A DNA stretch of 64,000 nt from IMGVR_UViG_3300023184_000024:62001-126000, one strand, 5' to 3'. Numbered from the stretch's first letter, positions 49,197 through 63,342 are shown. Notes: a model not told the origin generated them from the letters alone. Numbers and translations: made by a program.

Positions 49197-49669
49197 TTTT
49201 TAACCACATCAAAGACCTCAAAGCCGAAGGCAAACGAATCGGCATCACATTCAGTCAATTTGATTTATTGCATGCTGGACACATAGCAATGTTGGCCGAA
49301 GCAAAGAATCACTGCGATTATTTGATTGCGGGATTACAAACAGATGCCAGCGTTGATCGTCCAGATTCAAAAAATCCCCCTGTGCAAAGCATTGTGGAAC
49401 GACAAATACAACTGAGTGCTTGTCGCTTTGTAGATGAAATTGTTGTTTACACCACAGAACGAGATTTAGTAGACTTGATACTCACACTGCCAATTGATGT
49501 GCGCATCCTGGGAAAAGAGTACGAAGACACCAACTTCACAGGTCGTAACGAAGGTGCGGCGTTGCAAATTGAACATGTGTTTAACAGCAGAGACCATTCG
49601 TTCTCTTCAAGTAGCTTGAGAAAACGTGTATACAATGCAGAAGCAGAAAAACTACTGCCAAAGATATGA
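49193..49669 (+). CDS. Cytidylyltransferase (TagD-like)
   Basis: FSQFDLLHAGH, ERQIQL.AC.FVDE, FSSSSLRKR. Confidence 0.88.
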   Translation: MIFNHIKDLKAEGKRIGITFSQFDLLHAGHIAMLAEAKNHCDYLIAGLQTDASVDRPDSKNPPVQSIVERQIQLSACRFVDEIVVYTTERDLVDLILTLPIDVRILGKEYEDTNFTGRNEGAALQIEHVFNSRDHSFSSSSLRKRVYNAEAEKLLPKI

Positions 49670-50373
49670 TTTTATATGTAAACGGTGATAGTCATGCTGC
49701 CGCGGCCGAAGCAGTTAACCAACATGCATTTGCCGAGGACGACGGCCAGTATTTTTACATGGGCAGGTCTCCGCACCCTGATAACATAGCAGTTAGTTGG
49801 GGCAAACGTCTGTCAGAAATTGTCAAAGCAGTTTTTCATTGCCAAGCGGAATCTGCCAGCAGTAATCAACGTATTATTCGCACTGCCCGCGAGTGGGTTG
49901 CCAATCATCAATTAGATCATCCTCGTACAGTGATGATCATTCAATGGAGCACCTGGGAACGACAAGAATGGTTGATTGATGGTACATACTATCAAATTAA
50001 CGCATCGGGCATAGACACAGTACCCGACAGTCACAAAGAAAAATACAAACAGTTTGTAGCTGACATTGATTGGGAACAGGTAACAATACAAGCCCACAAC
50101 GAAATTTGGGAATTCCACAAAGAACTGGAATCTCAAAACATCAAACATGTATTTTTCAACGGGAATAATTGTTTTGACAAGTATGTCACAGATCGTCGAG
50201 ACTGGAAAGAATCATATATTGGACCATATGATCCTGCCCAGACCTTTGATGGGTGGTTAAAAAACAACGGGTTTGACACAGTTTCGCCCAATTCCTGGCA
50301 TTACGACAAAGAAGCTCATACAGCCTGGAGTCGTTTTATGTTACAATACTGTATAGCCAACAAACTAATATAA
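49666..50373 (+). CDS. SGNH-hydrolase-like hypothetical protein
   Basis: YVNGDSH (GDS); C-terminal WHY..EAH. Confidence 0.5.
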   Translation: MILYVNGDSHAAAAEAVNQHAFAEDDGQYFYMGRSPHPDNIAVSWGKRLSEIVKAVFHCQAESASSNQRIIRTAREWVANHQLDHPRTVMIIQWSTWERQEWLIDGTYYQINASGIDTVPDSHKEKYKQFVADIDWEQVTIQAHNEIWEFHKELESQNIKHVFFNGNNCFDKYVTDRRDWKESYIGPYDPAQTFDGWLKNNGFDTVSPNSWHYDKEAHTAWSRFMLQYCIANKLI

Positions 50374-50378
50374 CCTCA

Positions 50379-51401
50379 ATGAACTACCTACTGATAGACA
50401 CTGCTAACATGTTTTTCCGGGCACGGCACGTGGCCTTTCGAGCCGCTGATCCCTGGGAAAAAGTAGGCTCAGCATTGCATATCACATTGAGTGCAATTAA
50501 CAAAGTCTACAAAAAATTCAATGTAGACCATGTAATTTTTGCACTGGAAGGTCGAAGCTGGCGCAAAGACTTTTACACTCCGTACAAGCGCAATCGCAGT
50601 GATGCTAGAGCCGCACACACCGAATCTGAACAAGAAGAAGATAAACTGTTTTGGGAAACGTTCGACAGCTTCACTAAATACTTGAGTGAACAAACAAATT
50701 GTTCTGTTATTAGACATGAGCAAGCAGAAGCCGATGATATCATAGCCCGGTGGATCGCACTACATCCTGAAGATCAACACACAATTGTGTCAAGCGACAC
50801 AGATTTTGTTCAGCTTTTGGCAAACAATGTACAACAGTACAATGGCATTTCGGATGAGCTATTGACCATTGATGGTATATTTGATGCCAAGGGCAAGCCG
50901 GTGATTGATAAGAAAACCAAAGCACCCAAGACGATTCCTGATCCTTCTTGGCTGTTGTTTGAAAAAATCATGCGTGGCGACACCAGTGACAATGTGTTTT
51001 CGGCTTTTCCGGGTGTGCGTGAAAAAGGTACCAAGAACAAAGTGGGTCTAAGAGAAGCATTTGCTGACAAAGATAAAAAAGGCTATTCTTGGAATAATAT
51101 GATGCTTCAGCGTTGGGTTGACCACAATGGTGACGAACATAGGGTATTAGACGATTATGAACGCAATCAAATTCTCATTGACTTGACTGCGCAACCCGAA
51201 CACATCAAAGAAAAAGTCGATGTTGCCATCAAAGAACAAGTTAGTCACAAAGACACCGGACAGGTTGGTGTGAGATTTATGAAATTCTGCGGTCGTTACG
51301 AACTTAACCGTGCCAGTGAGTCAGCTGAACAATACAGTCAATGGCTCAATCAAACTTATAAAGGAGTATTAAATGATTATAGCGAAACCAGTGATACCTA
51401 A
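50379..51401 (+). CDS. rnh: RNase H / 5'-3' exonuclease (T4 Rnh-like, FEN family)
   Basis: LIDTANMFFR, EADDIIA, SSDTDFVQL, GDTSDNV. Confidence 0.9.
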   Translation: MNYLLIDTANMFFRARHVAFRAADPWEKVGSALHITLSAINKVYKKFNVDHVIFALEGRSWRKDFYTPYKRNRSDARAAHTESEQEEDKLFWETFDSFTKYLSEQTNCSVIRHEQAEADDIIARWIALHPEDQHTIVSSDTDFVQLLANNVQQYNGISDELLTIDGIFDAKGKPVIDKKTKAPKTIPDPSWLLFEKIMRGDTSDNVFSAFPGVREKGTKNKVGLREAFADKDKKGYSWNNMMLQRWVDHNGDEHRVLDDYERNQILIDLTAQPEHIKEKVDVAIKEQVSHKDTGQVGVRFMKFCGRYELNRASESAEQYSQWLNQTYKGVLNDYSETSDT

Positions 51402-51816
51402 TCAGTATTGGATACTCAAAAAAGACAACCAAAAAGTTGGAAATATTGAAGCAGTGGATGATGGGTTTTCTGTTAAAATCAACAACAACATCACAAGATT
51501 TAAAACCATTAACATGGTTGAGCAACGGGTGGGAGTCAATTTTGAAACATTGAACCGCTGTCCATTAAATGAAAATCCAAATCAAGTGCATGATTATCCC
51601 ACTAATGGAAAACCTCATAATTCGTTGTTTGATGTACAACATCAATTGCCATTATGGACCAAAGATGGAAAATCCAAGTCTTGGTATGCGGCAGGATGGT
51701 ACCGTGTGCGAATAGAACGCCATTGGAAAACTGTGCAATGCCCAAAGCTGATTACTCTTAAAAGATACGAGTACAAAGGTCCTTTCTACACACAAGACGA
51801 AGCGGCCAGATCATGA
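51373..51816 (+). CDS. Hypothetical protein
   Basis: AAGGAG RBS; overlaps the rnh end. Confidence 0.65.
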   Translation: MIIAKPVIPNQYWILKKDNQKVGNIEAVDDGFSVKINNNITRFKTINMVEQRVGVNFETLNRCPLNENPNQVHDYPTNGKPHNSLFDVQHQLPLWTKDGKSKSWYAAGWYRVRIERHWKTVQCPKLITLKRYEYKGPFYTQDEAARS

Positions 51817-52034
51817 GTTTACACATCAATAGATTCATTGACAAACTCAAGGCCTCGGACAGTCGCGGCCAAAGAGACTTCATCATGACCATGTCAGAAG
51901 CCAAAGACCTTCATGCTGACATCACCAAGTTGCTGTTGGGACTTCATGTGCTACATGAACAAACACAGGCAAAAGCCGCATCAATGGCTCAAACAGACGA
52001 CATCGAAGTTGAAATACAAGGATCTTCATTTTAA
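51813..52034 (+). CDS. Hypothetical protein
   Basis: Coupled ORF. Confidence 0.6.
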   Translation: MSLHINRFIDKLKASDSRGQRDFIMTMSEAKDLHADITKLLLGLHVLHEQTQAKAASMAQTDDIEVEIQGSSF

Positions 52035-52076
52035 AACTACCCACATTAAGCATAAATAAAATGTAGGGAGTTTTCA

Positions 52077-52382
52077 ATGAGTAGACCAAAACCCAAAGTC
52101 CTATTAGACTTAACTAATAAGACCAGTTATAAAACCGAACAAGTTCTGGCAGCCGAAGGCATTTGGGCAGTATTCTTTGACGGCCAGCCAATCAACCTTA
52201 AAACCAGTAACCTGTTGGTGCAGTATCCTGGACCAAAGTATAAAAAGGTAAGTTTTTCAAACCAAGGTCACGCCATTAATTTGGCCAAAAAATTAAACAC
52301 ACAATTTCGGTCAGATAAATTTTCAGTGGTGTTGTTGACATCTGGTCAACAAATCTTTCCCAATGAAAACAGTAAAGCGTGA
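52077..52382 (+). CDS. Hypothetical protein
   Basis: ATAAATA (52052) and GGGAG RBS upstream; YKKVSFSN.GHA motif. Confidence 0.7.
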   Translation: MSRPKPKVLLDLTNKTSYKTEQVLAAEGIWAVFFDGQPINLKTSNLLVQYPGPKYKKVSFSNQGHAINLAKKLNTQFRSDKFSVVLLTSGQQIFPNENSKA

Positions 52383-52725
52383 TCTCACTGAGCACATCTT
52401 AAATTTGTTGCCCGAGGGTAACCAAATTACAATAGACCAAGCACTTAAAACATGGTATCAAAATATTAGACCCAATGGCGGTCTGCGATTAACCAGTGCT
52501 GGTTATCAGGTCCTGCAGTTATTGAATATCGAATCTTGGACGATAGAATTTGATAATATTAAAAAACATATTTCTCAACGAGAATTGCTGAGCTTAGACC
52601 ATAAAATCAAATACCCTTATTACATTGATTTTAAAGGCAAACGTCTTATTCTATTTTCCAGTAAAGAAGCAATGTTGGCTACACTCTACGGGGACCTAAA
52701 AAAATTCCTTGAAAATTACAGTTGA
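52363..52725 (+). CDS. Hypothetical protein
   Basis: Overlapping operon ORF. Confidence 0.6.
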   Translation: MKTVKRDLTEHILNLLPEGNQITIDQALKTWYQNIRPNGGLRLTSAGYQVLQLLNIESWTIEFDNIKKHISQRELLSLDHKIKYPYYIDFKGKRLILFSSKEAMLATLYGDLKKFLENYS

Positions 52726-52750
52726 CCAGAAATTCAACTTCGGTTATACT
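52722..52750 (+). promoter_or_regulatory. sigma70 early promoter (cassette 1)
   Basis: TTGACC-N17-TATACT. Confidence 0.8.
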
Positions 52751-52777
52751 GTAAGTACAGTAAAAGAAAGGGAATAT

Positions 52778-52945
52778 ATGTCAAAATATACATTTATTGT
52801 TAACCCTAAAGTTAAAGAGATATTGGAATTATCCGATAAACTCCGTGAATGTTTAGAGTATCCCAACAGCGAAAACTCAAGGGATGAGCGACACTACTCA
52901 GAGCATTTTGAAGCTGAGATTATCAAGGTTATCAAGAGAAAATAA
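52778..52945 (+). CDS. 55-aa hypothetical early protein
   Basis: True start is ATG 52778 downstream of the promoter and a GGGA RBS. Confidence 0.6.
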   Translation: MSKYTFIVNPKVKEILELSDKLRECLEYPNSENSRDERHYSEHFEAEIIKVIKRK

Positions 52946-52948
52946 CCA

Positions 52949-53015
52949 ATAATATTATCGATAATCCCGATAATATTATCGATAATCCAGCTTAATCCAG
53001 CTTATATTCCAGCTT
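52949..53015. repeat. Tandem palindromic repeats in intergenic DNA
   Basis: ATAATATTATCGATAATCC at 52949 and 52970, each containing the palindrome ATTATCGATAAT; then three TCCAGCTT units. Confidence 0.8.
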
Positions 53016-53071
53016 GTTGTTAAAAAACAACACAGATTTTGGTTGACCAGAATTGCAAGATCGGTTATAAT
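53016..53071 (+). promoter_or_regulatory. GTTG-N8-CAAC operator plus sigma70 promoter (cassette 2)
   Basis: GTTG(53016)-N8-CAAC(53031); TTGACC(53043)-N17-TATAAT(53071). Confidence 0.8.
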
Positions 53072-53077
53072 ACTAGT

Positions 53078-53416
53078 ATGGAAATTAAAAAAGCAACCCG
53101 CAAAAAACGTGCAGATCGCACTCACATCATTTACCGCATTGAGAGCGGTGCAGACTTCTACATTGGTGTCACAGCCAAAACAGAAAGCACTGTTTTGAAG
53201 AGTGTAAAAACACGCATCAACAAGCACATCTATCGCTCACGTAGCGAAGACAAAAGCTGGGCCTTGTACGAAGCAATTCGTGCTCGCGGCACTGGTGCTT
53301 TCCAGTTCCGTATCGTTGCAGTTGTGCGTGGCAAAACAGAAGCTCACACCGCAGAACGTGCTCTGATCCGTGAACTCAAGCCCAACTTGAACACCGATGT
53401 ACGTGGTGTTGTTTAA
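53078..53416 (+). CDS. GIY-YIG-like nuclease domain protein
   Basis: IIYRIE...FYIGVT; R...H; HxAE..LI..LKPNLN; start ATG 53078. Confidence 0.7.
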
Positions 53417-53464
53417 ACGCAACACTACATTTTGGTTGACCAGAATTCGCCAATTTCGTATAAT
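53408..53464 (+). promoter_or_regulatory. GTTG-N8-CAAC operator plus sigma70 promoter (cassette 3)
   Basis: GTTG(53408)-N8-CAAC(53423); TTGACC(53436)-N17-TATAAT(53464); AAGGAG RBS. Confidence 0.85.
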
Positions 53465-53494
53465 ACGAGTATAGTAAACAAAAAGGAGTCAAAT

Positions 53495-53779
53495 ATGTCA
53501 TACGTAATCGTTGCAAAAGGTACCGGTTTAATTGTCACAGACGGTCCCAACAAAACCCGTGCCTACAAAACATTTGGTGCCGCTAAAGCAACTCGTACCC
53601 GTCTCTGCACCAAAGCAGGGTGGACAGAAGACCAACTCAACATTGTGGATCGCATCACTTACACCGCTCCCCAGAGACGGATGACTGTACTCAACTTGAT
53701 GACAGGCAAGCCTGTTGAGATTGATGCTGACACACCTTGGGCTTGCCGTGTAGACAGCGAAACATACTGGAGCAATTAA
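53495..53779 (+). CDS. Hypothetical early protein
   Basis: True start ATG 53495 after AAGGAG; C-terminal TPW.C.VDSETYW motif. Confidence 0.7.
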   Translation: MSYVIVAKGTGLIVTDGPNKTRAYKTFGAAKATRTRLCTKAGWTEDQLNIVDRITYTAPQRRMTVLNLMTGKPVEIDADTPWACRVDSETYWSN

Positions 53780-53780
53780 T

Positions 53781-54011
53781 ATGACAAATATCGCACCACG
53801 TTCTTTTACATTTGATGTCGTAGTAAGAGAAACTGCCGATGGTCGTGTCACCCGGTCCTCCACAGGCGGACCATGGCTACGATTGGCCAGAAAAATGGCC
53901 AAAGCTGGCACAGCCCGACTTGCAGTACAAGGCGGCGGCGTTATGGGGTACGGACGCTCATATGATGTTGGTTATTCTAAGTTGATTTATACAGTAACGG
54001 AGATTGTATAA
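53781..54011 (+). CDS. Hypothetical protein
   Basis: Coupled ORF. Confidence 0.55.
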   Translation: MTNIAPRSFTFDVVVRETADGRVTRSSTGGPWLRLARKMAKAGTARLAVQGGGVMGYGRSYDVGYSKLIYTVTEIV

Positions 54012-54154
54012 TGAAAGTCATTTACAACGGTTTGCTGGCAGGTTGGTACATTGTGCGTGGCGCACATCAAACACCCATTTCGGGCAGATTTGACAGTAAA
54101 GAATTGGCACTGGCCCATTTGCGTAGACGCAATCCTTTTCACACAGGAATTTAA
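54011..54154 (+). CDS. 47-aa hypothetical protein (below ORF-track cutoff)
   Basis: TAATG overlap; MKVIYNGLLAGWYIVRGAHQTPISGRF. Confidence 0.6.
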   Translation: MKVIYNGLLAGWYIVRGAHQTPISGRFDSKELALAHLRRRNPFHTGI

Positions 54155-54155
54155 A

Positions 54156-54557
54156 ATGGAAGTCTATATTGAAGGTCGTACAAAGGCCTGTAAATTTGTA
54201 GAGTCATTGATTCCCTCCATGCTGGAACAATTGAAGCTGACCAAAAGCCGAAAACTCTTGCACATCATTCTTGACCCCGATATCGACGAGCTTGGCAGTA
54301 CCATTCCATTGGATGGCATAGACACTTACTTGGTGGTTCTCAAGCCCACCCGAGACTTGTTTGCCTTGGGTGCTACCTTGGCGCACGAGCTCACCCATGT
54401 GTCACAATTTGCCAAAGGCACTCTACAGGTCACACCCAAAGGAAAGAAATGGCGTGGCAAGTTCTACGGCCGCAACGTCCCGTATCTAAATCAACCTTGG
54501 GAAATACAAGCATTTTCCAAGCAAGAAATTGTAATGCGCAGGGCCATAGAGCTTTGA
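54156..54557 (+). CDS. Zincin-like HExxH protein
   Basis: TLAHELTHVSQ; PWEIQA; AGGA RBS supports ATG 54156. Confidence 0.75.
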   Translation: MEVYIEGRTKACKFVESLIPSMLEQLKLTKSRKLLHIILDPDIDELGSTIPLDGIDTYLVVLKPTRDLFALGATLAHELTHVSQFAKGTLQVTPKGKKWRGKFYGRNVPYLNQPWEIQAFSKQEIVMRRAIEL

Positions 54558-54723
54558 TGTTGTGCAAAACCAGCCCCAAATCAGTGGCTAAAAGTAGTAC
54601 TTGAGTTTGCAGTTTTAACCCCTAAAACTAGTACTAAAGTACACATTTTTCTCTGTCAGGGTGTTTAATTTCCCTAGATGTTGTGCAAACGCATCTTAGC
54701 ACACAAAAACAGCGTAAAACCGC

Positions 54724-54755
54724 GGTTGACCAGAAATACCCATTTTGCTATAATA
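54724..54755 (+). promoter_or_regulatory. sigma70 promoter (cassette 4), 32 bp identical to 55029-55060
   Basis: GGTTGACCAGAAATACCCATTTTGCTATAATA. Confidence 0.85.
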
Positions 54756-54783
54756 CGAGTATAGTAAGAAAAAGGAGCTAAAA

Positions 54784-55011
54784 ATGATTCATCAAAACAT
54801 ACAAAAACTCATCAATGATTACCAGGAAATTCTGGACCGAGATCCCATGGATCAGAAGGAAGACACTCAAAGCATTCTCACTCGCTTTGCCCAAGTATTG
54901 GCCACAGAGCTAGGCGAAATCGTAGTAGCAAGTCCTTACATGGAAGGCGTTCACATGTACTTTGACGAGAAGATTGCTCGCTATGAAATTAAGCAAGCAG
55001 TAGGGTTGTAA
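54784..55011 (+). CDS. Hypothetical early protein
   Basis: AAGGAG RBS after the promoter. Confidence 0.7.
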   Translation: MIHQNIQKLINDYQEILDRDPMDQKEDTQSILTRFAQVLATELGEIVVASPYMEGVHMYFDEKIARYEIKQAVGL

Positions 55012-55060
55012 AAAAACAACGGTATTTTGGTTGACCAGAAATACCCATTTTGCTATAATA
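55005..55060 (+). promoter_or_regulatory. GTTG-N8-CAAC operator plus sigma70 promoter (cassette 5)
   Basis: GTTG(55005)-N8-CAAC(55020); TTGACC(55031)-N17-TATAAT(55059). Confidence 0.85.
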
Positions 55061-55089
55061 GAAGTATAGTAAGAAACAAGGAGCACTAA

Positions 55090-55467
55090 ATGACTACAGA
55101 CTTCAAAAGTTGGGACGAGTTAAGCGATTTGGAACAAGCCCAAGCCACTTTTTGGGACATGTATAAGGACGCCTACGGTGTTCGTCCCCGTGGTGTTGAT
55201 ACCTCTGCTTGGACTCTTGATGATTTTACATCTGAGTTTGTGATCCTTGGTCAAGCCATTGACCGTGAAGAGACAGCTCGCAAGGCGTCAGAAGCTCAGG
55301 CTGTCACAGCCTTTGAGCGCCGTATTGCTGAATTGATCAGCACAGGCGCCCGGGACTATGAAATGGCTCTGCGCTGGATTCACGAAGCCGAAGAGACTCG
55401 TGGCGACGATGACTATCTTGCCTGGACTCTGGGCTTGCCCTATCAATACTTCCGCAAAGCGGCTTAA
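55090..55467 (+). CDS. Hypothetical early protein
   Basis: AAGGAG RBS; YKDAYGVRPRG motif. Confidence 0.72.
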   Translation: MTTDFKSWDELSDLEQAQATFWDMYKDAYGVRPRGVDTSAWTLDDFTSEFVILGQAIDREETARKASEAQAVTAFERRIAELISTGARDYEMALRWIHEAEETRGDDDYLAWTLGLPYQYFRKAA

Positions 55468-55476
55468 GGAGCAACA

Positions 55477-55899
55477 ATGAAACACACTATTCTACTAGAA
55501 AATGGTACATATCTGCAGGTCAATGACCTGGGCTGGACTGAGCGTAAGACGCCCCGGCAGTACAAAAACCTGGCAGAAGCCCAACATCATTTACAATGGG
55601 GCATTGCCATGTGCCACACCAATGTCAAACTCAGAACAGACTACATTGCGGCCTATCATCGAGACAAAACTAGATTTGAAAAGGCTGTTGCCAAAGAACA
55701 GTCTCTAATCAAAAAGCTAGAGACACAACCTTATAACAAGGTAGCAGATCAGATTAAGAAAGCACTATTCAACATTGATCAACTCACTGTTAAGTTTTAT
55801 CCCAAAAGCCGTCTTGAGGACTTCAAGCGTGACACCAAGTTTTTGGCGAGTGCCAAAAGAGTACTGGCCAACAACCCCAGAGTTGTTGCTTTAGGTTGA
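55477..55899 (+). CDS. Hypothetical protein
   Basis: AAGGAG RBS. Confidence 0.68.
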   Translation: MKHTILLENGTYLQVNDLGWTERKTPRQYKNLAEAQHHLQWGIAMCHTNVKLRTDYIAAYHRDKTRFEKAVAKEQSLIKKLETQPYNKVADQIKKALFNIDQLTVKFYPKSRLEDFKRDTKFLASAKRVLANNPRVVALG

Positions 55900-55924
55900 C
55901 CAAAAAGGTCCAATTTAGTATAAT
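55896..55924 (+). promoter_or_regulatory. sigma70 promoter (cassette 6)
   Basis: TTGACC-N17-TATAAT, then CATAGTAAGAAAAAGGAG. Confidence 0.85.
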
Positions 55925-55953
55925 ACAAGCATAGTAAGAAAAAGGAGAACACA

Positions 55954-56265
55954 ATGATTGCAGAACTAAATCGATTAAAAGCATTAAAAGAAAGCCCCAG
56001 CCGTGGCGTCAGGGATGAGATTGAGATTTCTCAACTGGAAACTATGCTGGGCCAGAGTGCCTATTATGATCAACGACATGGCGGTCCTTACGATCGCGGT
56101 CAGGCAGACAGCTACTACGGTCGCGACTATATGCCGCATTACTTTGTGAGAGACACTCACCGTAGTCCTAGAATTGACATGGCGCAGATGACTGAGCATG
56201 AGATTGTGGCCTATACCGCAGGCTATCGCGACAACGAAGCCAATGGCGATAAGAAGGAGTGGTAA
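55954..56265 (+). CDS. Hypothetical early protein
   Basis: RHGGPYDRG.ADSYY motif; AAGGAG RBS. Confidence 0.7.
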   Translation: MIAELNRLKALKESPSRGVRDEIEISQLETMLGQSAYYDQRHGGPYDRGQADSYYGRDYMPHYFVRDTHRSPRIDMAQMTEHEIVAYTAGYRDNEANGDKKEW

Positions 56266-56266
56266 G

Positions 56267-56452
56267 ATGAGTAAGATGAGCGATTTATCAATTGAAATTG
56301 ACAGCATGCTAGAAGCAGGTTACTTGCCTGTGACCATTGCTAGAAATCTAGAAATCCCAGTGACCTGGGTCTACGAAACCGCCGACGTAGATACCGATGC
56401 GGACGAGGACATCACCGATGAACTCAGCCCATTTGAAACCATCAACAGTTAA
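56267..56452 (+). CDS. Hypothetical protein
   Basis: Start ATG 56267 after AAGGAG. Confidence 0.55.
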   Translation: MSKMSDLSIEIDSMLEAGYLPVTIARNLEIPVTWVYETADVDTDADEDITDELSPFETINS

Positions 56453-56461
56453 GGAACTGCC

Positions 56462-56863
56462 ATGACCATGCCTGCTGGAAAGTATTACATTGGTGACTTG
56501 TGCTATGTCATGCATGACGAATGGGACGAGTGTTGTAGCCTTTTCTTTCCCACTAACCAAAGTGGCCGTGGCGTAGAAGGTGAGTTCCAACTACGTGACG
56601 GGCGACAATTTGCCAGCTTTGGTACTGCCTACGGCGATGGCGAATACTACGACAACATGGGCGACAGTCATTGCGTGGACTCGGGGTCAATTGGTTGTAT
56701 CCGTGTGGCGGACATTCGCGATGAAACCTACGGCAACATTGAATCTTTGGGTTCCGTTGTGGAATTTAAAGAACCCTTTGAAGTTGAAAAAGTAGGCAGA
56801 GGCCTGCTGAAATTTGGACACGTGGAAATTGATACAGATCCTGTCTATGACGAAACCTATTAA
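56462..56863 (+). CDS. Hypothetical protein
   Basis: YYIGDLCYV, TAYGDGEY, VDSGSIGC motifs; AAGGA RBS. Confidence 0.7.
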   Translation: MTMPAGKYYIGDLCYVMHDEWDECCSLFFPTNQSGRGVEGEFQLRDGRQFASFGTAYGDGEYYDNMGDSHCVDSGSIGCIRVADIRDETYGNIESLGSVVEFKEPFEVEKVGRGLLKFGHVEIDTDPVYDETY

Positions 56864-57167
56864 CAAGTTAGTTGACAATGGCCGGGTGGCGGTGTTATAC
56901 TCGCCGGGCTTTGGCGCAGGTTGGTCAACTTGGAATCAAGGAGTGCCAGATCTCATGTTTGATCCTGCTATTGTAAAATTTGTAGAGGATGACCAATGGG
57001 CAGAGTTAAACACCTATGTCACACTCAAGTACCCGGGTATCTACACAGGCGGCATGAGAGACTTGGCTGTAGCCTGGCTACCTGTGGGTACTGAGTTTCG
57101 AATCGGCGAACACGACGGTGCAGAAAACATTGAGGTAAAAGACAACCAACTTTGGTTTGTTGCCTAA
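56847..57167 (+). CDS. Hypothetical protein
   Basis: VAVLYSPGFGAGWSTW motif; start approximate. Confidence 0.65.
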   Translation: MTKPINKLVDNGRVAVLYSPGFGAGWSTWNQGVPDLMFDPAIVKFVEDDQWAELNTYVTLKYPGIYTGGMRDLAVAWLPVGTEFRIGEHDGAENIEVKDNQLWFVA

Positions 57168-57227
57168 TTGCATTGACTTGTAATTGGATTTGCTGTAAAA
57201 TTTGACTTTAAACAAAGGGTATTAACT

Positions 57228-57749
57228 ATGATCACTCTCAAAGAATGGATGGAAACCGTTGACTATCGTATCACAGAAGGCAGTGAATACACTTGGAATT
57301 GTTTTGGCAACAATTCCTACAGTCTAGATTCATGGAATGGTGAACAAGATGGTCACGCATTCCATATTATTTTTGATACTCGCACACAGGAAGTTTATCA
57401 AGTTGATGCTCACGACTACAAGAACCGTCGTAGTTATCGAATGACCAATCCCGACTATCTTGACGCCTACAACAAGTCAGTTAAACATCATAGCATCAAT
57501 GATGTTGCCTATGATGATGTTAAATTTATTGACTTGGAAGTTGAGGAAGATTGGCTTGAAAAAGCTCGTTGTATCTTCCTTGGCAACGATTACGACACGC
57601 GAGTACAATTGCCCATAGATTTTTCAGATGAGGAACTGTTGACTCACATGAAGGCCGCACATGACATGGATATTACATTTAATCAATACGTTGTGCAGGC
57701 CCTGACAGCGGCCATAGACAATCATCGTACAACGCAGGAGTCAAAATGA
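57228..57749 (+). CDS. Hypothetical protein
   Basis: 173-aa ORF after a TTGACT..TAAAAT promoter-like site. Confidence 0.7.
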   Translation: MITLKEWMETVDYRITEGSEYTWNCFGNNSYSLDSWNGEQDGHAFHIIFDTRTQEVYQVDAHDYKNRRSYRMTNPDYLDAYNKSVKHHSINDVAYDDVKFIDLEVEEDWLEKARCIFLGNDYDTRVQLPIDFSDEELLTHMKAAHDMDITFNQYVVQALTAAIDNHRTTQESK

Positions 57750-58054
57750 ATATTGTAAAACCACACCCAAATGTTTATATACGCACCACAGTGAACATTG
57801 ACTTGAGTGCCGAACAATGGGGACTGCACACAAGTTCGTTTTCTCGAACAATGGTTGAGAAGGTTGCTACATTCCTTAACAAAAAAGTCACACATACCTT
57901 TAACATTGGGTGTGATAGAAAAACTGTGGAAGAACACTTTAATTGTCTAGCAGATCATTTTAAATTATACGGTGCCACTAACAAGAATACTCAAGCTATT
58001 CTTAAAGGCTTGCTGGATGAACTGTTTAGTAGCCGTGCTATTAACAAAAAATGA
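57746..58054 (+). CDS. Hypothetical protein
   Basis: AGGAG RBS, coupled. Confidence 0.6.
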   Translation: MNIVKPHPNVYIRTTVNIDLSAEQWGLHTSSFSRTMVEKVATFLNKKVTHTFNIGCDRKTVEEHFNCLADHFKLYGATNKNTQAILKGLLDELFSSRAINKK

Positions 58055-58377
58055 CCGATGACCAGCAATTGTTTTGGGACATTATTTCCTGCAATTATTC
58101 TCGCATCAGCCATGTCTGGGGGCGAGAAATGCAGGACTTGGTCATGAGAAACAAGATGAAAAAGTTTCACCGTATGGCTGACAACTGTGTTTCTGCTGTG
58201 TTGTTGTGGCCCGCTGATGCCAGAGCTCGGGCAGTAAAAACTTGGTTGAGCAGTTATCGGTTACCATTTGATCCCAGGCGAATGGACTCATTTGATGATT
58301 TTCATAAAACAACTGCTTCGTACATTTTTAACAATGCTAAACATATCCACAGCTACGATGAGAATTTGACTACATAA
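58051..58377 (+). CDS. Hypothetical protein
   Basis: Coupled ORF. Confidence 0.55.
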   Translation: MTDDQQLFWDIISCNYSRISHVWGREMQDLVMRNKMKKFHRMADNCVSAVLLWPADARARAVKTWLSSYRLPFDPRRMDSFDDFHKTTASYIFNNAKHIHSYDENLTT

Positions 58378-58385
58378 AAGATCAC

Positions 58386-58462
58386 GGGCCGTTAGCTCAT
58401 TAGGTTAGAGCAGTGGACTCATAATCCATTGGTGGAGTGTTCGAATCACTCACGGCCCACCA
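58386..58462 (+). tRNA. tRNA with CAT anticodon, probably Ile2 (lysidine type)
   Basis: GGGCCGT/ACGGCCC acceptor, CUCAUAA loop, encoded CCA; D/anticodon arms resemble E. coli ileX. Confidence 0.85.
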
Positions 58463-58481
58463 AATATATTGAAAGACTAAA

Positions 58482-58730
58482 ATGAAAACAACAGATAAAA
58501 AAATCAAAGTTGAATTTGCACCAGGTGCGTTTGATGATTTCGAAGGCACACAAGAAGAGCTGGATCAACTGCAAGAAGAACTGTTGACATTGTTTTCTGA
58601 GTTGACTCCTGAAGAATTGTCGTTGAGAAGTATGCCAGTTGATCTTGATGCGTTGAGTGCCGAAGATCCTGATGTTGCTGAAAAGATTGCAAACTTTTTA
58701 GGCGATGATGCTACACGAGTACTGCAATAA
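58482..58730 (+). CDS. Acidic hypothetical protein
   Basis: 82-aa ORF. Confidence 0.6.
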   Translation: MKTTDKKIKVEFAPGAFDDFEGTQEELDQLQEELLTLFSELTPEELSLRSMPVDLDALSAEDPDVAEKIANFLGDDATRVLQ

Positions 58731-59290
58731 TGGCCAAGATTGCTAAAAGTCCTGACCGACATACCTTTCAAAAAGAAGGTTATATTAAACGCATGAAAGA
58801 ACAGGGCAAAGAGCCAAATCCCGACTACGTTGAAATGTATAAAACTTGGCGTGTGCAGGATGAGGCTAACGTAGTAGATCCTGCTTGGCAAAAAGACAAC
58901 ATGGAGTACGACTTGCGTGTTGCAACTTGGATCTGCGACAAAGCCAAGGCCAGCGAGGCATACGCTCAAAACTTGTATGCGGCCATGTGCAACAGAGACT
59001 TCATGAAAAACGACGTTATGCCAATACTCAAAGATCAGCGTTGGAGTGCCAGTTGGCGTCATGCAGGAGGCATTGTTGCTGACATGCGGGAAGAAGGTGA
59101 CTATATTGATTGGTACTGCTCGGGCATTGGCGGTACGATGGCTGGCGGCAATGAGTCTGATCCTGCAATAGAAGAGGCCATACTGGCTAGAAAAAATTAC
59201 GTGCCAGAGGGCACCATCACTGACGAGATACGAGAAGATTTATTCCGACTGGGTTGGATTGTGTTGGAAGAAGACGACAACGACCAGTGA
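58730..59290 (+). CDS. Hypothetical protein
   Basis: YAQNLYAAMCN, WRHAGGIVAD, DYIDWYCSG motifs. Confidence 0.7.
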   Translation: MAKIAKSPDRHTFQKEGYIKRMKEQGKEPNPDYVEMYKTWRVQDEANVVDPAWQKDNMEYDLRVATWICDKAKASEAYAQNLYAAMCNRDFMKNDVMPILKDQRWSASWRHAGGIVADMREEGDYIDWYCSGIGGTMAGGNESDPAIEEAILARKNYVPEGTITDEIREDLFRLGWIVLEEDDNDQ

Positions 59291-59519: not shown

Positions 59520-61274
59520 ATGACACACTCGATTGCACTAGTACAAGCCAATGATATAATAGGTAACAATGTTAGGTTACCATTGGCCATCGGTGTACTT
59601 TGGCAGCAGGCAATGACTAGTACACTTAATTCTAACAAGTGGGAATTAGAAAAAATAGTTCACGCTAAATTACCCGTAAACGAAACAGCACAACAATTGT
59701 CGCACTGCGATGTTGTTGCATTTAGTTGCTATGTGTGGAACTTTGAATACCACATGCAACTGGCACAAGCTATTAAAAAAATAAACCCAACTTGCTTTGT
59801 AGTAGTTGGTGGTCCTCAAATACACACAGGGTTTGTGGACTTTTGGCCAGCATGGGGACACTGCATAGACTTTGCATTACTGGGCGAAGGTGACAACAGT
59901 TTTTGCCAATTGTTGGAACAGTGGCCCGCCCAACAAAGCAGTGCCATTCCGGGTGCCTGGACCAAAGACTGGTGTCAAGGCGAAGCACCAAGAACTGAAA
60001 ACCTAACTACATTACCCAGTCCGTACTTGAACGGATTCTACGATTCAATCATCCAAGAAGAAACAGCCAAGGGCCATTATATTGAAGCTGTGCTCCAGAC
60101 CAATCGAGGATGCCCATACCATTGTACTTTTTGTGAAGAAGGCAAAGAGTACAAAAATAAAATGTTCTTCTACGACGAAAAACAAATACGCCAAGAAATA
60201 GAATGGTTTGGTATCAACAAAATTGAAATGGTGGACATTGCCGATGACAATTGGGGAATTGCTGACAGAGATGTTGACCTCATGCAGTATATCTGTGAAA
60301 CAAAACTCAAATACGGATACCCCAACGTGCTCGATGCCACGTATGCCAAGAATGCTCCTGATCGATTATGGGCAATTGCCAAGATAGATCATCGATTCGG
60401 AACCAAGTTGATCAGAGGTATAACATTTGCATATCAAAGCAACAACACAGAAACACTGTCTGCAATTAAAAGATTCAATCTTGTGCCAGACAAGCAGTAC
60501 CAACTGATCAAAAAGCTAAAAAGTATCGGAACTCCTACCTACGTAGAAATGATCTGGCCACTGCCGTATGAAACATATCAAACATTTTGTCAGGGCATTG
60601 ACGACACAATCGACCTAGGACTTGATACTTGGTTACAAGTGTACACCTTGGGTATGAGTCCTTCCACTGATTTATATGATGATTTCGTCAACAGCTACGA
60701 CTTGGCTGCTAGTAAAAGTAATCAAAGTTTTATACCTGCGTTTGCAACCCCTGTCAGTAATAAGTGGGTGACCAACGAAACAATGATACAAGGGCAGGTA
60801 TTTTATACGTGGCTAGCGGTGCTGTATTATTTTGGGTTTGCAAGGCCTGTACTTGAATGGTTTAAATTATCAAAGGGACAAACAATCACTCAAACTGTTG
60901 ATAAATTCATTGAGTTTGCCGGCTCAGACACAACGTTGTGTGCATACAAAGAAAAAATCAACAACTACTGGCAACAAAGTATTTTAAAACAACCATTGCC
61001 TGACATTGGTATGTTTAAAAATTCCACAGACTTTTGGCAACCATACACGCATCTGGCCAGCTGGTTACAACACGATCATGACAATTTTATAGTCAGCGTC
61101 GGCGAATTTTTAGAATCACAACAGTTAGATACATCGGACATATCAAGGTTGACAGAGAAACTCAAACACTGTATAGTTAAGTTTTCCCACAGTGATGCTG
61201 ACAAGTTTTTTAATTTTTGCCAGCAATACTATTTCTACAAACGAAAATCTGGTGCATCTTATGTGTCGCCATAA
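59520..61274 (+). CDS. Cobalamin-binding radical SAM protein
   Basis: N-terminal LPLAIGVL, AFSCYVWN and VVGGPQ (B12-binding domain); TNRGCPYHCTFC. Confidence 0.88.
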   Translation: MTHSIALVQANDIIGNNVRLPLAIGVLWQQAMTSTLNSNKWELEKIVHAKLPVNETAQQLSHCDVVAFSCYVWNFEYHMQLAQAIKKINPTCFVVVGGPQIHTGFVDFWPAWGHCIDFALLGEGDNSFCQLLEQWPAQQSSAIPGAWTKDWCQGEAPRTENLTTLPSPYLNGFYDSIIQEETAKGHYIEAVLQTNRGCPYHCTFCEEGKEYKNKMFFYDEKQIRQEIEWFGINKIEMVDIADDNWGIADRDVDLMQYICETKLKYGYPNVLDATYAKNAPDRLWAIAKIDHRFGTKLIRGITFAYQSNNTETLSAIKRFNLVPDKQYQLIKKLKSIGTPTYVEMIWPLPYETYQTFCQGIDDTIDLGLDTWLQVYTLGMSPSTDLYDDFVNSYDLAASKSNQSFIPAFATPVSNKWVTNETMIQGQVFYTWLAVLYYFGFARPVLEWFKLSKGQTITQTVDKFIEFAGSDTTLCAYKEKINNYWQQSILKQPLPDIGMFKNSTDFWQPYTHLASWLQHDHDNFIVSVGEFLESQQLDTSDISRLTEKLKHCIVKFSHSDADKFFNFCQQYYFYKRKSGASYVSP

Positions 61275-61888: not shown

Positions 61889-61963
61889 ATCGCTGTCGTT
61901 CAACGAACAGGACACCATGCTACGAACGTGGGAATGGAGGTTTGATTCCTTCCAGCGATACCA
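61889..61963 (+). tRNA. tRNA-Arg(ACG), non-canonical elbow
   Basis: ATCGCTG/CAGCGAT acceptor, CUACGAA loop, CCA; D-loop G18A19 and T-loop U56. Confidence 0.8.
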
Positions 61964-61965
61964 GG

Positions 61966-61994
61966 TTGACCAATAATTGGTTTGGTAGTATAAT
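61966..61994 (+). promoter_or_regulatory. sigma70-type promoter
   Basis: GGTTGACC-N17-TATAAT directly after tRNA-Arg. Confidence 0.8.
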
Positions 61995-62015
61995 TTGTTT
62001 TTTAAGGAGAAGTGT

Positions 62016-62210
62016 ATGAAGCACAAGATGATCGTGCCACAACGTAACCCCTTCGTTGTGTTGGCACTAAAACGCAAAGCGGGTAGTCATCGCAAGAGCA
62101 ACAAAGCTCTGCGTCGATGCGAAAAATCTAGGGATCGTGGTGAAGCGGTATCACAGCAGACTTTTAATCTGCCAATCCCGAGTTCGAATCTCGGCGGTCC
62201 CACCATATAA
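62016..62210 (+). CDS. Small basic protein whose 3' end overlaps tRNA-Lys
   Basis: AAGGAG RBS; QRNPFVVLALKRKAGSHRKSNKALRR; the frame continues through the tRNA. Confidence 0.5.
   Translation: MKHKMIVPQRNPFVVLALKRKAGSHRKSNKALRRCEKSRDRGEAVSQQTFNLPIPSSNLGGPTI
62131..62205 (+). tRNA. tRNA-Lys(TTT)
   Basis: GCAGA-CTTTTAA-TCTGC anticodon arm; TTCGAAT; CCA. Confidence 0.92.
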
Positions 62211-62271
62211 AAACACATTGGTGTTGGTTTAACAAATAAGTAAACCTAGTTATAGTGTGTTTCTATATGGT
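62202..62271 (+). other. Long hairpin in tRNA-cluster spacer
   Basis: ACCATATA/TATATGGT plus AAACACAT/GTGTGTTT and inner GGTTTA/TAAACC. Confidence 0.6.
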
Positions 62272-62277
62272 AGAGTT

Positions 62278-62367
62278 GGAACGGTCCCATAATGGTATTG
62301 GAGCGGATTGCTAATCCGTCGAGTGGTGAAAGCCGCTTTCTGGGTTCAAGTCCCAGTCGTTCCGCCA
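62278..62367 (+). tRNA. tRNA-Ser(GCT)
   Basis: TTGCTAA loop, long variable arm, G73, CCA. Confidence 0.93.
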
Positions 62368-62374
62368 ACATTTT

Positions 62375-62450
<76 letters not shown>

Positions 62451-62457
62451 AACATAT

Positions 62458-62533
<76 letters not shown>

Positions 62534-62541
62534 ATTTCTTA

Positions 62542-62633
62542 ACCTCGGTAGTTTAACGGTAAAACAGCGGATTTATATCCCGTGCGCAACAGATAATTGG
62601 CCAATGTGGGTTCAACTCCCGCCCGAGGTACCA
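62542..62633 (+). tRNA. tRNA with TAT anticodon (nominal Ile-AUA) and a 22-nt variable arm
   Basis: ACCTCGG/CCGAGGT acceptor, TTTATAT loop (anticodon 62574-62576), 7/5 fold, A73, CCA. Confidence 0.75.
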
Positions 62634-62641
62634 TCAAGTTT

Positions 62642-62715: not shown

Positions 62716-62731
62716 AATAAAGGAGCATAGT

Positions 62732-63337: not shown

Positions 63338-63342
63338 TACAT

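What the first reader, a model, noticed from the sequence alone, without database searches (positions are those of the whole stretch)
52722..55953. Array of early genes each headed by a near-identical promoter-RBS cassette
Seen: six GTTGACCA-N-TA[TC]AAT/TATACT promoters in 3.2 kb, most followed by AC[GA]AGTATAGTAA..AAAAAGGAG; 32 bp are identical at 54724 and 55029. Known: T4-type phages carry mobile early-promoter cassettes (PeSLs) that mediate modular shuffling. Inference: a hot spot for acquiring and immediately expressing host-takeover or anti-defence ORFs.
Basis: partly seen in the sequence, partly recalled or inferred. Interest (0 to 1): 0.6.

Follow-up and report, generated by a model that had tools for sequence, protein, structure and literature searches.

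The report
Shuffling promoter cassettes in lake jumbo phage
A 352-kb uncultured lake phage carries about 20 near-identical strong promoter plus ribosome-site cassettes, six of them packed in 3.2 kb; related phages show the small genes between cassettes being swapped and relocated, as with the "PeSL" cassettes of T4-type phages, here in a different phage group.

Summary
Six GTTGACCA-N16-TATAAT/TATACT promoters lie at window 52721-55924, all on the + strand. The window holds 8 such sites against 0.5 expected by chance. They belong to a family of about 20 cassettes in this 352,754-bp lake jumbo phage. Five large relatives carry 11-15 each, and at least 118 IMG/VR contigs hold the pattern.

A cassette runs from an optional upstream hairpin through a T-tract, -35, extended -10 and -10 to a conserved leader and AAGGAG. 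A leaderless variant has its ATG at the predicted +1.

- At least 12 module combinations occupy this one slot in relatives.
- The window's cassette genes are single-copy but sit at 4-5 other loci in relatives.
- One gene lies between two cassettes in relatives, where this genome has a single cassette (an empty site).
- Breakpoints fall on cassette edges.
- Synonymous divergence of several cargo genes is far lower than in core genes, which indicates exchange between lineages.

Not tested: early timing, promoter and terminator activity, mini-circles and ORF functions. The anti-defence idea is speculation.

Verdict: a new member of a known kind. Interest is moderate.

The parts
52711..52780 (+). 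Cassette P1. -35 at 52722-52727, -10 TATACT at 52745-52750, weak SD, ATG at 52778. The -35 overlaps the TGA stop of the upstream core gene g120. No upstream hairpin.
   Evidence: an orthologous promoter is present in G003
52778..52945 (+). c1_55, a 55-aa ORFan. No homolog in any sampled relative.
52945..53013 (.). AT-rich inverted repeat holding two copies of the 12-bp palindrome ATTATCGATAAT, then three CCAGCTTA repeats, between c1_55 and P2. Likely a hairpin or operator region.
   Evidence: 17-pair stem listed; partly conserved in G003 and G004
53015..53080 (+). Cassette P2. Hairpin GTTGTT-A5-ACAAC, T-tract, -35 at 53043-53048, -10 at 53066-53071, ATG at 53078 = predicted +1 (leaderless, no SD).
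53078..53416 (+). GIY112, a 112-aa GIY-YIG-like nuclease. It is a core gene at this position in all relatives and is always leaderless.
   Evidence: (PF01541 E 1.7e-4; PHROG homing-endonuclease families at about 1e-6)
53403..53497 (+). Cassette P3. Strong hairpin at 53403-53428 (-16.5 kcal/mol, z -2.9) plus T-tract, -35 at 53436, -10 at 53459-53464, predicted +1 at 53471, AAGGAG at 53483-53488, ATG at 53495.
   Evidence: homology with L083 and L054 ends at 53488
53495..54557 (+). Module 3. c3_94 (53495-53779), c3_76 (53781-54011), c3_47 (54011-54154) and MP133, an HExxH metallopeptidase-like protein (54156-54557).
   Evidence: located at other loci in G001-G004; low pS for c3_94 and c3_76
54598..54724 (+). 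Conserved non-coding element upstream of P4: a long hairpin followed by T5. It is 93% identical to a copy in G001, where it lies downstream of c4_75.
   Evidence: no Rfam match
54714..54786 (+). Cassette P4. -35 at 54726, extended -10 TGC plus TATAAT at 54749-54754, predicted +1 at 54761, SD, ATG at 54784. Its 32-bp core is identical to that of P5.
54784..55011 (+). c4_75, a single-gene module flanked by the two identical promoter cores.
   Evidence: (alone between cassettes in G001)
55005..55092 (+). Cassette P5. Weak hairpin GTTGT-A7-ACAAC, T-tract, -35 at 55031, -10 at 55054-55059, predicted +1 at 55066, SD, ATG at 55090.
   Evidence: homology with L083 and L054 resumes at 55024-55028
55090..55899 (+). 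Module 5. c5_125 (55090-55467, phrog_21968) and c5_140 (55477-55899). The TAG stop of c5_140 abuts the -35 of P6.
   Evidence: a contig in run X6 lacks c5_140 and P6
55869..55956 (+). Cassette P6. Hairpin CAACAAC-N6-GTTGTTG inside the 3' end of c5_140, -35 at 55896, -10 at 55919-55924, predicted +1 at 55931, SD, ATG at 55954.
55954..57167 (+). Module 6. c6_103 (55954-56265), c6_61 (56267-56452), c6_133 (56462-56863, phrog_20074) and c6_106 (56847-57167).
49666..52725 (+). Conserved left flank (g235, g340 = 5'-3' exonuclease/FEN, g147, g73, g101, g120). Syntenic in all relatives, with saturated synonymous divergence.
57228..59290 (+). Right flank (g173, g102, g108, tRNA-Met at 58386-58462, g82, g186). 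g173, g82 and g186 are the syntenic anchors in relatives.

Best explanation
The six sites are PeSL-type composite regulatory cassettes in a hyperplastic region of an uncultured freshwater jumbo phage. Its DNA polymerase places it near the Atu_ph07 and Rak2-like phages of the T4 superfamily.

Each cassette is a compact terminator-promoter-RBS unit. It starts with an often weak upstream hairpin and a T-tract. Then come a near-consensus host sigma70 promoter (GGTTGACC, 17 nt, often TGn, TATAAT), a start at the A seven nt after the -10, a conserved leader of about 24 nt, AAGGAG and the ATG. In a leaderless subclass the ATG itself sits at +1.

Each cassette heads a short transcription unit of one to four small ORFs. 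These are probably read by unmodified host RNA polymerase straight after infection. Large genes use a separate TAAATA late-type motif.

The roughly 70-nt cassette is held near one consensus by selection, so copies at different loci and in different co-infecting lineages stay alike. They can therefore serve as portable homology for recombination, and modules bounded by cassettes are deleted, inserted, replaced and relocated.

Shown here: the anatomy, the family and its conservation, the hyperplasticity, the cassette-edge breakpoints, and the younger ancestry of several cargo genes. Inferred: promoter and terminator activity, early timing, and recombination between cassettes (possibly through excised circles) as the cause.
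For: - Statistics and family size. Relatives carry 11-15 copies each, all on the gene strand. At least 118 IMG/VR contigs hold the pattern. Across three genomes, 55 copies share a consensus that extends through the spacer and the leader.
- Start-site consistency: the distance from the -10 to the ATG is bimodal, 29-31 nt or exactly 6 nt. The 6-nt class has 41 cases in 9 gene families. GIY112 is leaderless in 16 of 17 cassette-headed family members and in all five large relatives' syntenic loci.
- Hairpins: 60% of cassettes have a hairpin of -6 kcal/mol or better within the 40 nt upstream, against 24% of shuffles. The TTGY..RCAA motif is seen in 33%, against 5% of random windows.
- Cargo: 80 unrelated first-ORF clusters, median 92 aa.
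- Plasticity: the core flanks are syntenic, but at least 12 module combinations follow GIY112 in 20 relatives. The window's cassette genes are single-copy, yet lie at 4-5 other cassette clusters in G001-G004.
- Filled versus empty site: G003 and G002 have geneA-P-c5_140-P-geneB, while this genome has geneA-P-geneB at 320.6 kb. The crossover lies inside the promoter core.
- Replacement slot: homology with L083 and L054 stops at 53488 (the SD of P3) and resumes at 55024-55028 (the 5' edge of P5). The slot has six alternative contents, one of them empty.
- Synteny breaks: intergenic regions with a cassette are enriched in breaks. Against G003 it is 13 of 15 versus 103 of 268, Fisher p 3e-4. Against G004, long-range breaks give p 0.02.
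- Similarity of neighbours: adjacent cassettes are more alike outside the hexamers (0.61 versus 0.55, permutation p 0.0014).
- Divergence: core genes have pS 0.72-0.91 (saturated), while c3_94, c3_76, c4_75 and c5_140 have pS 0.40-0.48.
- Second promoter class: TAAATA lies 8-45 nt (mostly 15-30) before 46 mostly large genes, where about 4 are expected.
- The literature definition and mechanism come from PMC2839356 and PMC4122927.
Against: - There is no expression, start-site, terminator or circle data. Only contigs of DNA runs were available.
- Only one of the six hairpins (P3) is clearly stable. P1 has none, and the stems are AT/GU-rich, so terminator function is doubtful.
- About half of the breakpoints inside this locus lie at tight gene junctions with no promoter: c3_47|MP133, c5_125|c5_140, c6_133|c6_106 and c6_106|g173.
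- G001 and G005 fill the same slot with 5-7 kb of larger ORFs and no cassettes, so other mechanisms also act here.
- Cassette identity within a genome equals that between genomes (0.548 versus 0.542). There is therefore no genome-wide homogenisation, and conservation is mainly selective.
- The link between cassettes and synteny breaks may be confounded. Both mark accessory regions, and the events are clustered rather than independent.
- The low dS rests on short genes, and selection on synonymous sites in highly expressed genes could add to it.
Confidence: 0.65

Rival explanations
1. The cassettes are ordinary, strongly selected early promoters and nothing more. Each small operon needs a maximal sigma70 promoter and RBS. 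The shuffling of the region is driven by other processes, such as illegitimate recombination at gene boundaries, general recombination in flanking coding homology, or nuclease-stimulated exchange. The link with breakpoints arises only because both cassettes and plasticity mark accessory regions.
For: Cassette identity within and between genomes is equal, so selection explains the conservation. Half of the local breakpoints lack a cassette. G001 and G005 vary at this slot without cassettes. The Fisher tests are not corrected for clustering.
Against: Several junctions fall within a few nt of cassette edges or inside the promoter core. Single genes sit between two cassettes where other genomes have one. 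The flanking pairs of such modules are the most similar pairs. All four cassette junctions in this locus are breakpoints against G003, compared with 4 of 8 other junctions.
Confidence: 0.25
2. The array is a recent local amplification. One promoter was duplicated in tandem within this genome, which gave six look-alike copies with no wider meaning.
For: P4 and P5 share 32 identical bp. Adjacent copies are slightly more alike than non-adjacent ones.
Against: The family has about 20 members in five other clusters of this genome and 11-15 in each of five diverged relatives. Orthologous copies lie in front of orthologous genes, for example GIY112. The genes between copies are unrelated to each other and are single-copy.
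Confidence: 0.03
3. The cassette is an autonomous mobile element or a specific recombination site, integron-attC-like or MITE-like. It would be moved by a dedicated phage enzyme, for example the adjacent conserved GIY-YIG nuclease, rather than by general homologous recombination.
For: About 70 nt are conserved, including the spacer and the leader, which is more than a promoter strictly needs. A conserved GIY-YIG-like gene sits in the middle of this hyperplastic slot in all relatives. One module shows a circular permutation: the element 54598-54724 lies upstream of c4_75 here but downstream of it in G001.
Against: There are no terminal inverted repeats or target-site duplications. No integrase or transposase was found in this locus by Pfam or PHROG scans of its ORFs. 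The other cassette clusters have no GIY-YIG gene beside them. The extended -10, the start-site region and the SD account for much of the extra conservation.
Confidence: 0.05

Closest known systems
PeSLs (promoter-early stem-loops) of T4-type phages RB49/phi1, PST/T4 and nt-1/KVP40 (Arbiol et al. 2010, PMC2839356; Comeau et al. 2014, PMC4122927)
   Same: Both are composite stem-loop + AT/T-rich tract + sigma70-type -35/-10 + SD + start codon units. Both are repeated tens of times, concentrated in hyperplastic regions and placed in front of small ORFans. Both are tied to insertions, deletions, replacements and displacements between relatives. The case of one ORF between two cassettes against a single cassette mirrors ORF192 of RB49 versus phi1.
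   Different: The host phage is a 352-kb uncultured freshwater jumbo phage, nearest to Atu_ph07/Phosso and the Rak2-like group, and not a 160-250-kb Tevenvirinae. The stem is a sequence-conserved, AT/GU-rich GTTGT...ACAAC hairpin always upstream of the -35, not the GC-rich stems of RB49 placed at varying positions. The leader and RBS are part of the conserved unit. A leaderless subclass exists. Conservation holds across genomes whose core genes are saturated at synonymous sites, whereas the published cases compare close pairs. Promoter and terminator activity and mini-circles were shown experimentally for RB49 and phi1, but not here.
T4 early promoters and T4 late promoters (TATAAATA)
   Same: There is a two-class layout. 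An extended sigma70-like class heads small early-type ORFs, and a -35-less A/T motif sits 15-30 nt before large genes.
   Different: The -35 is TTGACC, closer to the E. coli consensus than the T4 GTTTAC. The late-like motif is nTAAATA, and the full T4 octamer is rare (7 copies). No gp55, AsiA or MotA homologs were looked for or found, except that a Sigma70_r2 search was negative.
Integron gene cassettes (attC-bounded promoterless ORFs captured at attI)
   Same: Both are arrays of small, unrelated, exchangeable ORF modules at a fixed platform, with circular intermediates proposed.
   Different: There is no integrase and no attC-type folded sites. Every module brings its own promoter and RBS, and the exchange is presumed to be homologous rather than site-specific.

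Membership tests
PeSL cassettes | Near-consensus sigma70-type promoter (-35, spacer of about 17 nt, -10) | tested here: met
   All six sites score 10-11 of 12 hexamer positions with a 17-nt spacer. P4 and P5 also have TGn. This is sequence only; activity was not assayed.
PeSL cassettes | Stem-loop associated with the promoter that acts as a terminator or attenuator | tested here: inconclusive
   A hairpin lies directly upstream of P2, P3, P5 and P6, but only P3 is stable (-16.5 kcal/mol, z -2.9). P4 has a distal hairpin plus T5, and P1 has none. Clade-wide, 60% of cassettes have a hairpin against 24% of shuffles. Terminator function is untested.
PeSL cassettes | AT-rich tract upstream of the -35 | tested here: met
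   ATTTTG precedes GGTTGACC in the consensus and in P2, P3 and P5.
PeSL cassettes | Shine-Dalgarno sequence and start codon of the downstream gene at the 3' end | tested here: met
   AAGGAG lies 5-7 nt before the ATG at P3-P6, and P1 has a weak SD. P2 is a leaderless variant.
PeSL cassettes | Many copies per genome, concentrated in hyperplastic regions and in front of small ORFs of unknown function | tested here: met
   About 20 copies in six clusters. First ORFs have a median of 92 aa and fall into 80 unrelated clusters. The slot is hypervariable.
PeSL cassettes | Indels, replacements and displacements between related phages with junctions in or beside the cassettes | tested here: met
   About half of the local junctions lie elsewhere.
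PeSL cassettes | Excised mini-circles carrying one chimeric cassette | not testable with these tools
   Only Logan contigs were available. They break at the cassette cores (54753 and 55031). One back-joint in run X6 (55079 to 53493) comes from a 90-95% relative and is not diagnostic.
PeSL cassettes | Early transcription by host RNA polymerase | not testable with these tools
   No RNA run holds the locus. The only support is indirect: a separate TAAATA class before large genes.
T4 superfamily (the phage group in which PeSLs were defined) | T4-type core replication genes | tested here: met
   The DNA polymerase matches phrog_262 at E 8e-196. It is 47-50% identical to Atu_ph07/Phosso and 42% to 121Q-type phages, and it hits T4-like coliphages and cyanophages. 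Only this gene and a 5'-3' exonuclease were checked, so the phage is a distant relative and not a Tevenvirinae.

The most novel reading that the evidence does not exclude
The cassette may be more than a promoter. On this reading it is the dedicated exchange site of an integron-like, promoter-carrying gene-cassette system of freshwater jumbo phages. The whole 70 nt, spacer and leader included, would be kept constant because a phage factor recognises it. One candidate is the always-adjacent, always-leaderless GIY-YIG nuclease. That factor would nick or bind the cassette to launch excision of cassette-bounded modules as circles and their capture at any other cassette, in the same or a co-infecting genome. 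This would account for the young synonymous age of the cargo genes.
Probability: 0.07. Interest if true: 0.8.

Novelty: new member of a known kind. Interest (0 to 1): 0.5.

Why it matters
PeSLs have been documented only in a few pairs of cultured T4-like phages. This locus shows the same architecture and the same comparative signatures in an uncultured clade of about 350-kb lake phages far from the T-evens. Here the cassettes remain recognisable across genomes whose core genes are saturated at synonymous sites.

That extends promoter-cassette shuffling to jumbo phages. It also gives a practical handle: one 43-nt pattern pulls out at least 118 contigs. The handle can be used to harvest the exchangeable, probably immediately expressed small-gene pool of this clade (80 families in this sample), which is where host-takeover and counter-defence genes would be sought.

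The leaderless subclass, with its ATG exactly at the predicted start site, provides an internal check on the start-site assignment and is itself unusual for lytic phage early genes.

Tried and rejected
- **Cultured relatives of the locus.** The INPHARED phage search with the 5-kb region and with an 80-nt cassette gave no match.
- **Rfam on 51.5-59 kb.** Only tRNA-Met was found; the non-coding element at 54598-54724 has no family.
- **Reads.** No RNA runs were found. The DNA runs are contigs that break at the cassette cores, so module order, circles and expression could not be read. The joint 55465 to 55942 in X6 (loss of c5_140 and P6 at a shared AAGGAG) has only 25 nt on one side and comes from a 90-95% relative. 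I treat it as consistent, not as proof. The back-joint 55079 to 53493 is not diagnostic of a circle.
- **Function of c3_94.** Pfam, PDB sequence search, an AF2 model (pLDDT 75.7) and Foldseek against the PDB gave nothing. The atlas gave only viral hypotheticals and a weak T4 Y01A lead at 0.81. c5_140 had no atlas hit.
- **T4 late machinery.** The T4 late octamer TATAAATA is not enriched (7 copies), and there is no Sigma70_r2 domain in the genome.
- **TTGACCA excess.** The apparent excess on both strands (41 versus 15) vanishes under a hexamer-based expectation (115 versus 110). It reflects composition, not signal.
- **Genome-wide concerted evolution of cassettes.** Rejected: identity within a genome equals identity between genomes.
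- **Gene caller.** My first greedy ORF caller picked spurious antisense ORFs in the small-gene regions. The synteny test was redone using only ORFs with conserved homologs.
- **Clostridium MAG hit.** This match to the cassette pattern is a chance match (GC 0.29, nhmmer E 0.005).

Full report
**1. Observation**

Reading window 52000-56800 shows six sites of the form GTTGACCA, 16 nt, TATAAT (TATACT at the first). Their -35 hexamers are at 52722, 53043, 53436, 54726, 55031 and 55896, all on the + strand.
- TTGACC-N16-18-TANANT occurs 8 times in the 64-kb window. Shuffles expect 0.51 +/- 0.73, and 0 of 100 reach 8. The consensus scan ranks five of the six at 11 of 12 hexamer positions with a 17-nt spacer, and P1 at 10 of 12.
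- The 32-bp identity between 54724 and 55029 is real.
- The downstream leader ending in AAGGAG is present at sites 3-6 and degenerate at site 1. Site 2 has none: its ATG (53078) follows the -10 after six nt.

**2. The genome and the family**

The window is positions 62001-126000 of a 352,754-bp IMG/VR virus record. Its ends overlap by 127 bp, which indicates a circular assembly.
- Its DNA polymerase is T4 gp43-type (phrog_262, E 8e-196). It is 47-50% identical to Agrobacterium phage Atu_ph07 and Sinorhizobium phage Phosso, and 42% to the 121Q/Rak2-like group. Near-identical pieces occur in lake and freshwater metagenomes from several studies.
- The exact promoter pattern occurs 13 times in the genome, all forward. 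A 72-nt profile finds 20 copies at E below 1e-3, all on the + strand. They lie in clusters at 1.3-2.5 kb, 10-15 kb, 114.7-117.9 kb (this finding), 126.8 kb, 283.7-284.3 kb and 319.9-320.6 kb.
- Five relatives of 315-349 kb carry 11-15 exact copies each, always on one strand. At least 118 IMG/VR contigs contain a 23-specified-base version of the cassette. No cultured phage has it.
- Fifty-five copies from three genomes give a consensus running from ATTTTG through GGTTGACC, an A/T-rich spacer ending in TTTGC (so TGn, an extended -10), TATAAT, A, a conserved GTATAGTAA block and AAAAAGGA.

**3. Anatomy and predicted start site**

In 346 cassette hits (118 loci plus three genomes), 312 have a downstream ORF.
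- The distance from the end of the -10 to the ATG is bimodal: 29-31 nt in most, and exactly 6 nt in 39 (5-6 nt in 41).
- The second class puts the A of the ATG at the position where sigma70 promoters normally start. In the leadered class the conserved A of ATAGTAA sits at the same position. The two classes thus agree on +1.
- Nine gene families are mostly leaderless. The GIY-YIG-like gene of the window (53078-53416) is leaderless in 16 of 17 contigs and in all five large relatives.
- Upstream hairpins of the type GTTGT-loop-ACAAC followed by ATTTTG precede P2, P3, P5 and P6. Only P3's is clearly stable (-16.5 kcal/mol, z -2.9). P1 has none, and its -35 overlaps the stop codon of g120. P4 has a long hairpin plus T5 about 95 nt upstream.
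- Across the 55 copies, 60% have a hairpin of -6 kcal/mol or better in the 40 nt upstream, against 24% of shuffles.

**4. Genes**

The modules are as follows.
- P1: c1_55, an ORFan with no homolog in the sample.
- P2: GIY112, which scores against Pfam GIY-YIG at E 1.7e-4, just under the cut-off, and against PHROG homing-endonuclease families at about 1e-6.
- P3: c3_94, c3_76, c3_47 and MP133. MP133 carries HELTH and matches DUF6782 and phrog_10499.
- P4: c4_75.
- P5: c5_125 (phrog_21968) and c5_140.
- P6: c6_103, c6_61, c6_133 (phrog_20074) and c6_106.

None has an informative function. An alignment-based AF2 model of c3_94 (pLDDT 75.7) has no PDB fold match, and the atlas look-ups were uninformative. 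The left flank is a replication-type block that includes a 5'-3' exonuclease. The right flank holds tRNA-Met, g82, g186 and a B12-binding radical-SAM protein.

**5.

The flanks g235-g340-g147-g73-g101-g120 and g173/g82/g186 are syntenic in all five large relatives. GIY112 sits at the same place in all of them. What lies around it varies.
- G002 and G003 go from GIY112 straight to g173, so window 53410-57227 is absent there. Yet its genes, which are single-copy in this genome, are found at four or five other cassette clusters of those genomes.
  - MP133, c3_94, c3_47, c4_75 and c6_106 lie together near G003 51-53 kb, in a different order, with MP133 behind its own cassette.
  - c5_125 lies at 65 kb.
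  - c5_140 lies alone between two cassettes at 98.8 kb.
  - c6_103 and c6_133 lie at 282 kb.
- The flanks of the G003/G002 c5_140 module correspond to this genome's 320.3-320.9 kb. There a single cassette (320608) joins the same two genes, so this is a filled-versus-empty pair. The left copy in G003 carries the generic leader and the right copy carries the leader of the downstream gene, so the exchange point lies in the promoter core.
- Against the closer relatives L083 and L054 (GIY112 96-98% identical), homology stops at 53488, the SD of P3. It resumes at 55024-55028, the 5' edge of P5.
- That slot holds six different contents in different phages, one of them empty. In 20 relatives at least 12 module combinations follow GIY112.
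- Genome-wide, intergenic regions with a cassette are broken in synteny far more often than others. Against G003 it is 13 of 15 versus 103 of 268, p 3e-4. Against G004, long-range breaks give p 0.02. These events are clustered, so the p-values are indicative only.

**6. Age of the cargo**

Between this genome and G003 or G004, core genes are saturated at synonymous sites. The flank genes, the DNA polymerase and the 1087-aa protein have pS 0.72-0.91. In contrast c3_94, c3_76, c4_75 and c5_140 have pS 0.40-0.48 (dS 0.56-0.78), and GIY112 is intermediate at 0.55-0.61. The simplest reading is that these modules share a more recent ancestor than the genomes that carry them, which means exchange between lineages. 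Short gene length and possible selection on synonymous sites are caveats.

**7. What maintains the cassettes**

Outside the hexamers, cassette pairs are no more alike within a genome than between genomes (0.548 versus 0.542). Neighbours are slightly more alike (0.61, permutation p 0.0014). Some module-flanking pairs are near-identical, such as P4/P5 here and G004 214446/214730 at 0.91. Conservation is therefore mainly selection for one optimal sequence. On top of that there are local duplicates of the kind left by insertion through a single crossover.

**8. Temporal class**

No RNA data exist for the locus. The T4 late octamer is rare and no Sigma70_r2 domain was found. However, TAAATA lies 8-45 nt (mostly 15-30) before the ATG of 46 mostly large genes, against about 4 expected, and without a -35. 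So there are two promoter classes. The cassette class is the one a host sigma70 holoenzyme could use unaided. 'Early' remains an inference.

**9. Comparison with the known**

The PeSL papers define stem-loop plus sigma70 promoter plus SD and start cassettes in hyperplastic regions. They describe recombination between cassettes that deletes, inserts or swaps ORFans, with mini-circles shown by PCR in phi1 and RB49 (PMC2839356, PMC4122927).

All sequence-level and comparative criteria are met here. The stem-loop criterion is only partly met. Activity, timing and circles are untested.

The differences are these:
- the phage group;
- the fixed upstream position and sequence conservation of a weak hairpin;
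- the inclusion of the leader and RBS in the conserved unit;
- the leaderless subclass;
- persistence across deep divergence.

**10. Limits**

About half of the junctions inside the locus lie at promoterless gene boundaries. G001 and G005 fill the slot with larger ORFs and no cassettes. Recombination between cassettes is therefore a contributor, not the only process.

Contigs of public runs break at the cassette cores. They show many alternative neighbours on both sides (loose ends at 54722-54762 and 55026-55063), which fits a repeated element but proves no rearrangement. A contig in run X6 that joins 55465 to 55942, lacking c5_140 and P6, matches the L083-type arrangement, but it has a short side and comes from a 90-95% relative.

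**11. Verdict**

This is a new member of a known kind, of moderate interest.

Noticed in passing
window 53066-53416, and 41 cassette copies in related loci: This is a leaderless subclass. The ATG lies exactly 6 nt after the -10, at the predicted +1, with no SD. It occurs in 9 gene families. The GIY-YIG-like gene is leaderless in 16 of 17 contigs and in all five large relatives.
   Followed up: partly
window 52945-53013: An AT-rich inverted repeat holds two copies of the 12-bp palindrome ATTATCGATAAT, followed by three CCAGCTTA repeats. It lies between c1_55 and P2 and is partly conserved in G003, where the P1 ortholog is followed by this region and no ORF. It could be an operator, a terminator or a small transcript.
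   Followed up: no
window 54598-54724; L153:1803-1994 (G001): This 125-nt non-coding element (a long hairpin plus T5) is 93% identical between two genomes whose core genes are saturated at synonymous sites. It is fused to a cassette promoter in both, but lies upstream of c4_75 here and downstream of c4_75 in G001, a circular permutation of the module. It has no Rfam family.
   Followed up: partly
whole genome; in the window before the genes starting at 2466, 4156, 5037, 10854, 14347, 21675 and 52077, and the minus-strand gene whose start is at 63883: A second promoter-like class exists. nTAAATA lies 8-45 nt (mostly 15-30) upstream of the ATG of 46 mostly large genes, against about 4 expected, with no -35. 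It resembles T4 late promoters, although the full TATAAATA octamer is rare.
   Followed up: partly
window 58386-58462 and 61889-63417: Nine tRNA genes are present (Met x2, Arg, Lys, Ser, Thr, Asn, Ile-tat, Trp). A cassette-type promoter at 61965 starts immediately after tRNA-Arg, and consensus sigma70 promoters lie at 61149 and 61299.
   Followed up: no
L189 (contig in an uncultured Polynucleobacter MAG): This 5.3-kb contig, binned with a freshwater Polynucleobacter genome, carries the cassette. It is a fragment of a related phage (tblastx 47-59% to this genome's 146.8-150.3 kb). It is a weak host hint that rests on binning only.
   Followed up: partly
window 59520-61274: A 584-aa protein has B12-binding and radical-SAM domains, both just under the Pfam cut-offs. 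It lies next to the tRNA cluster.
   Followed up: no
window 5037-8300: A 1087-aa protein has a weak match to the T7-type protein kinase / host-transcription shut-off family (phrog_15752, E 3e-6) in residues 580-790.
   Followed up: no
genome 175068-189245 (outside the window): A single minus-strand ORF of about 4,700 aa sits within a minus-strand block (151-201 kb) in an otherwise plus-strand genome.
   Followed up: no
window 53495-53779 and alignment A2: The c3_94 family is the commonest cargo behind the cassette (22 contigs). It has an invariant C-terminal motif, N.M.G ... DTP..C ... E.(Y/F)W, and a predicted alpha/beta fold with no PDB match.
   Followed up: partly
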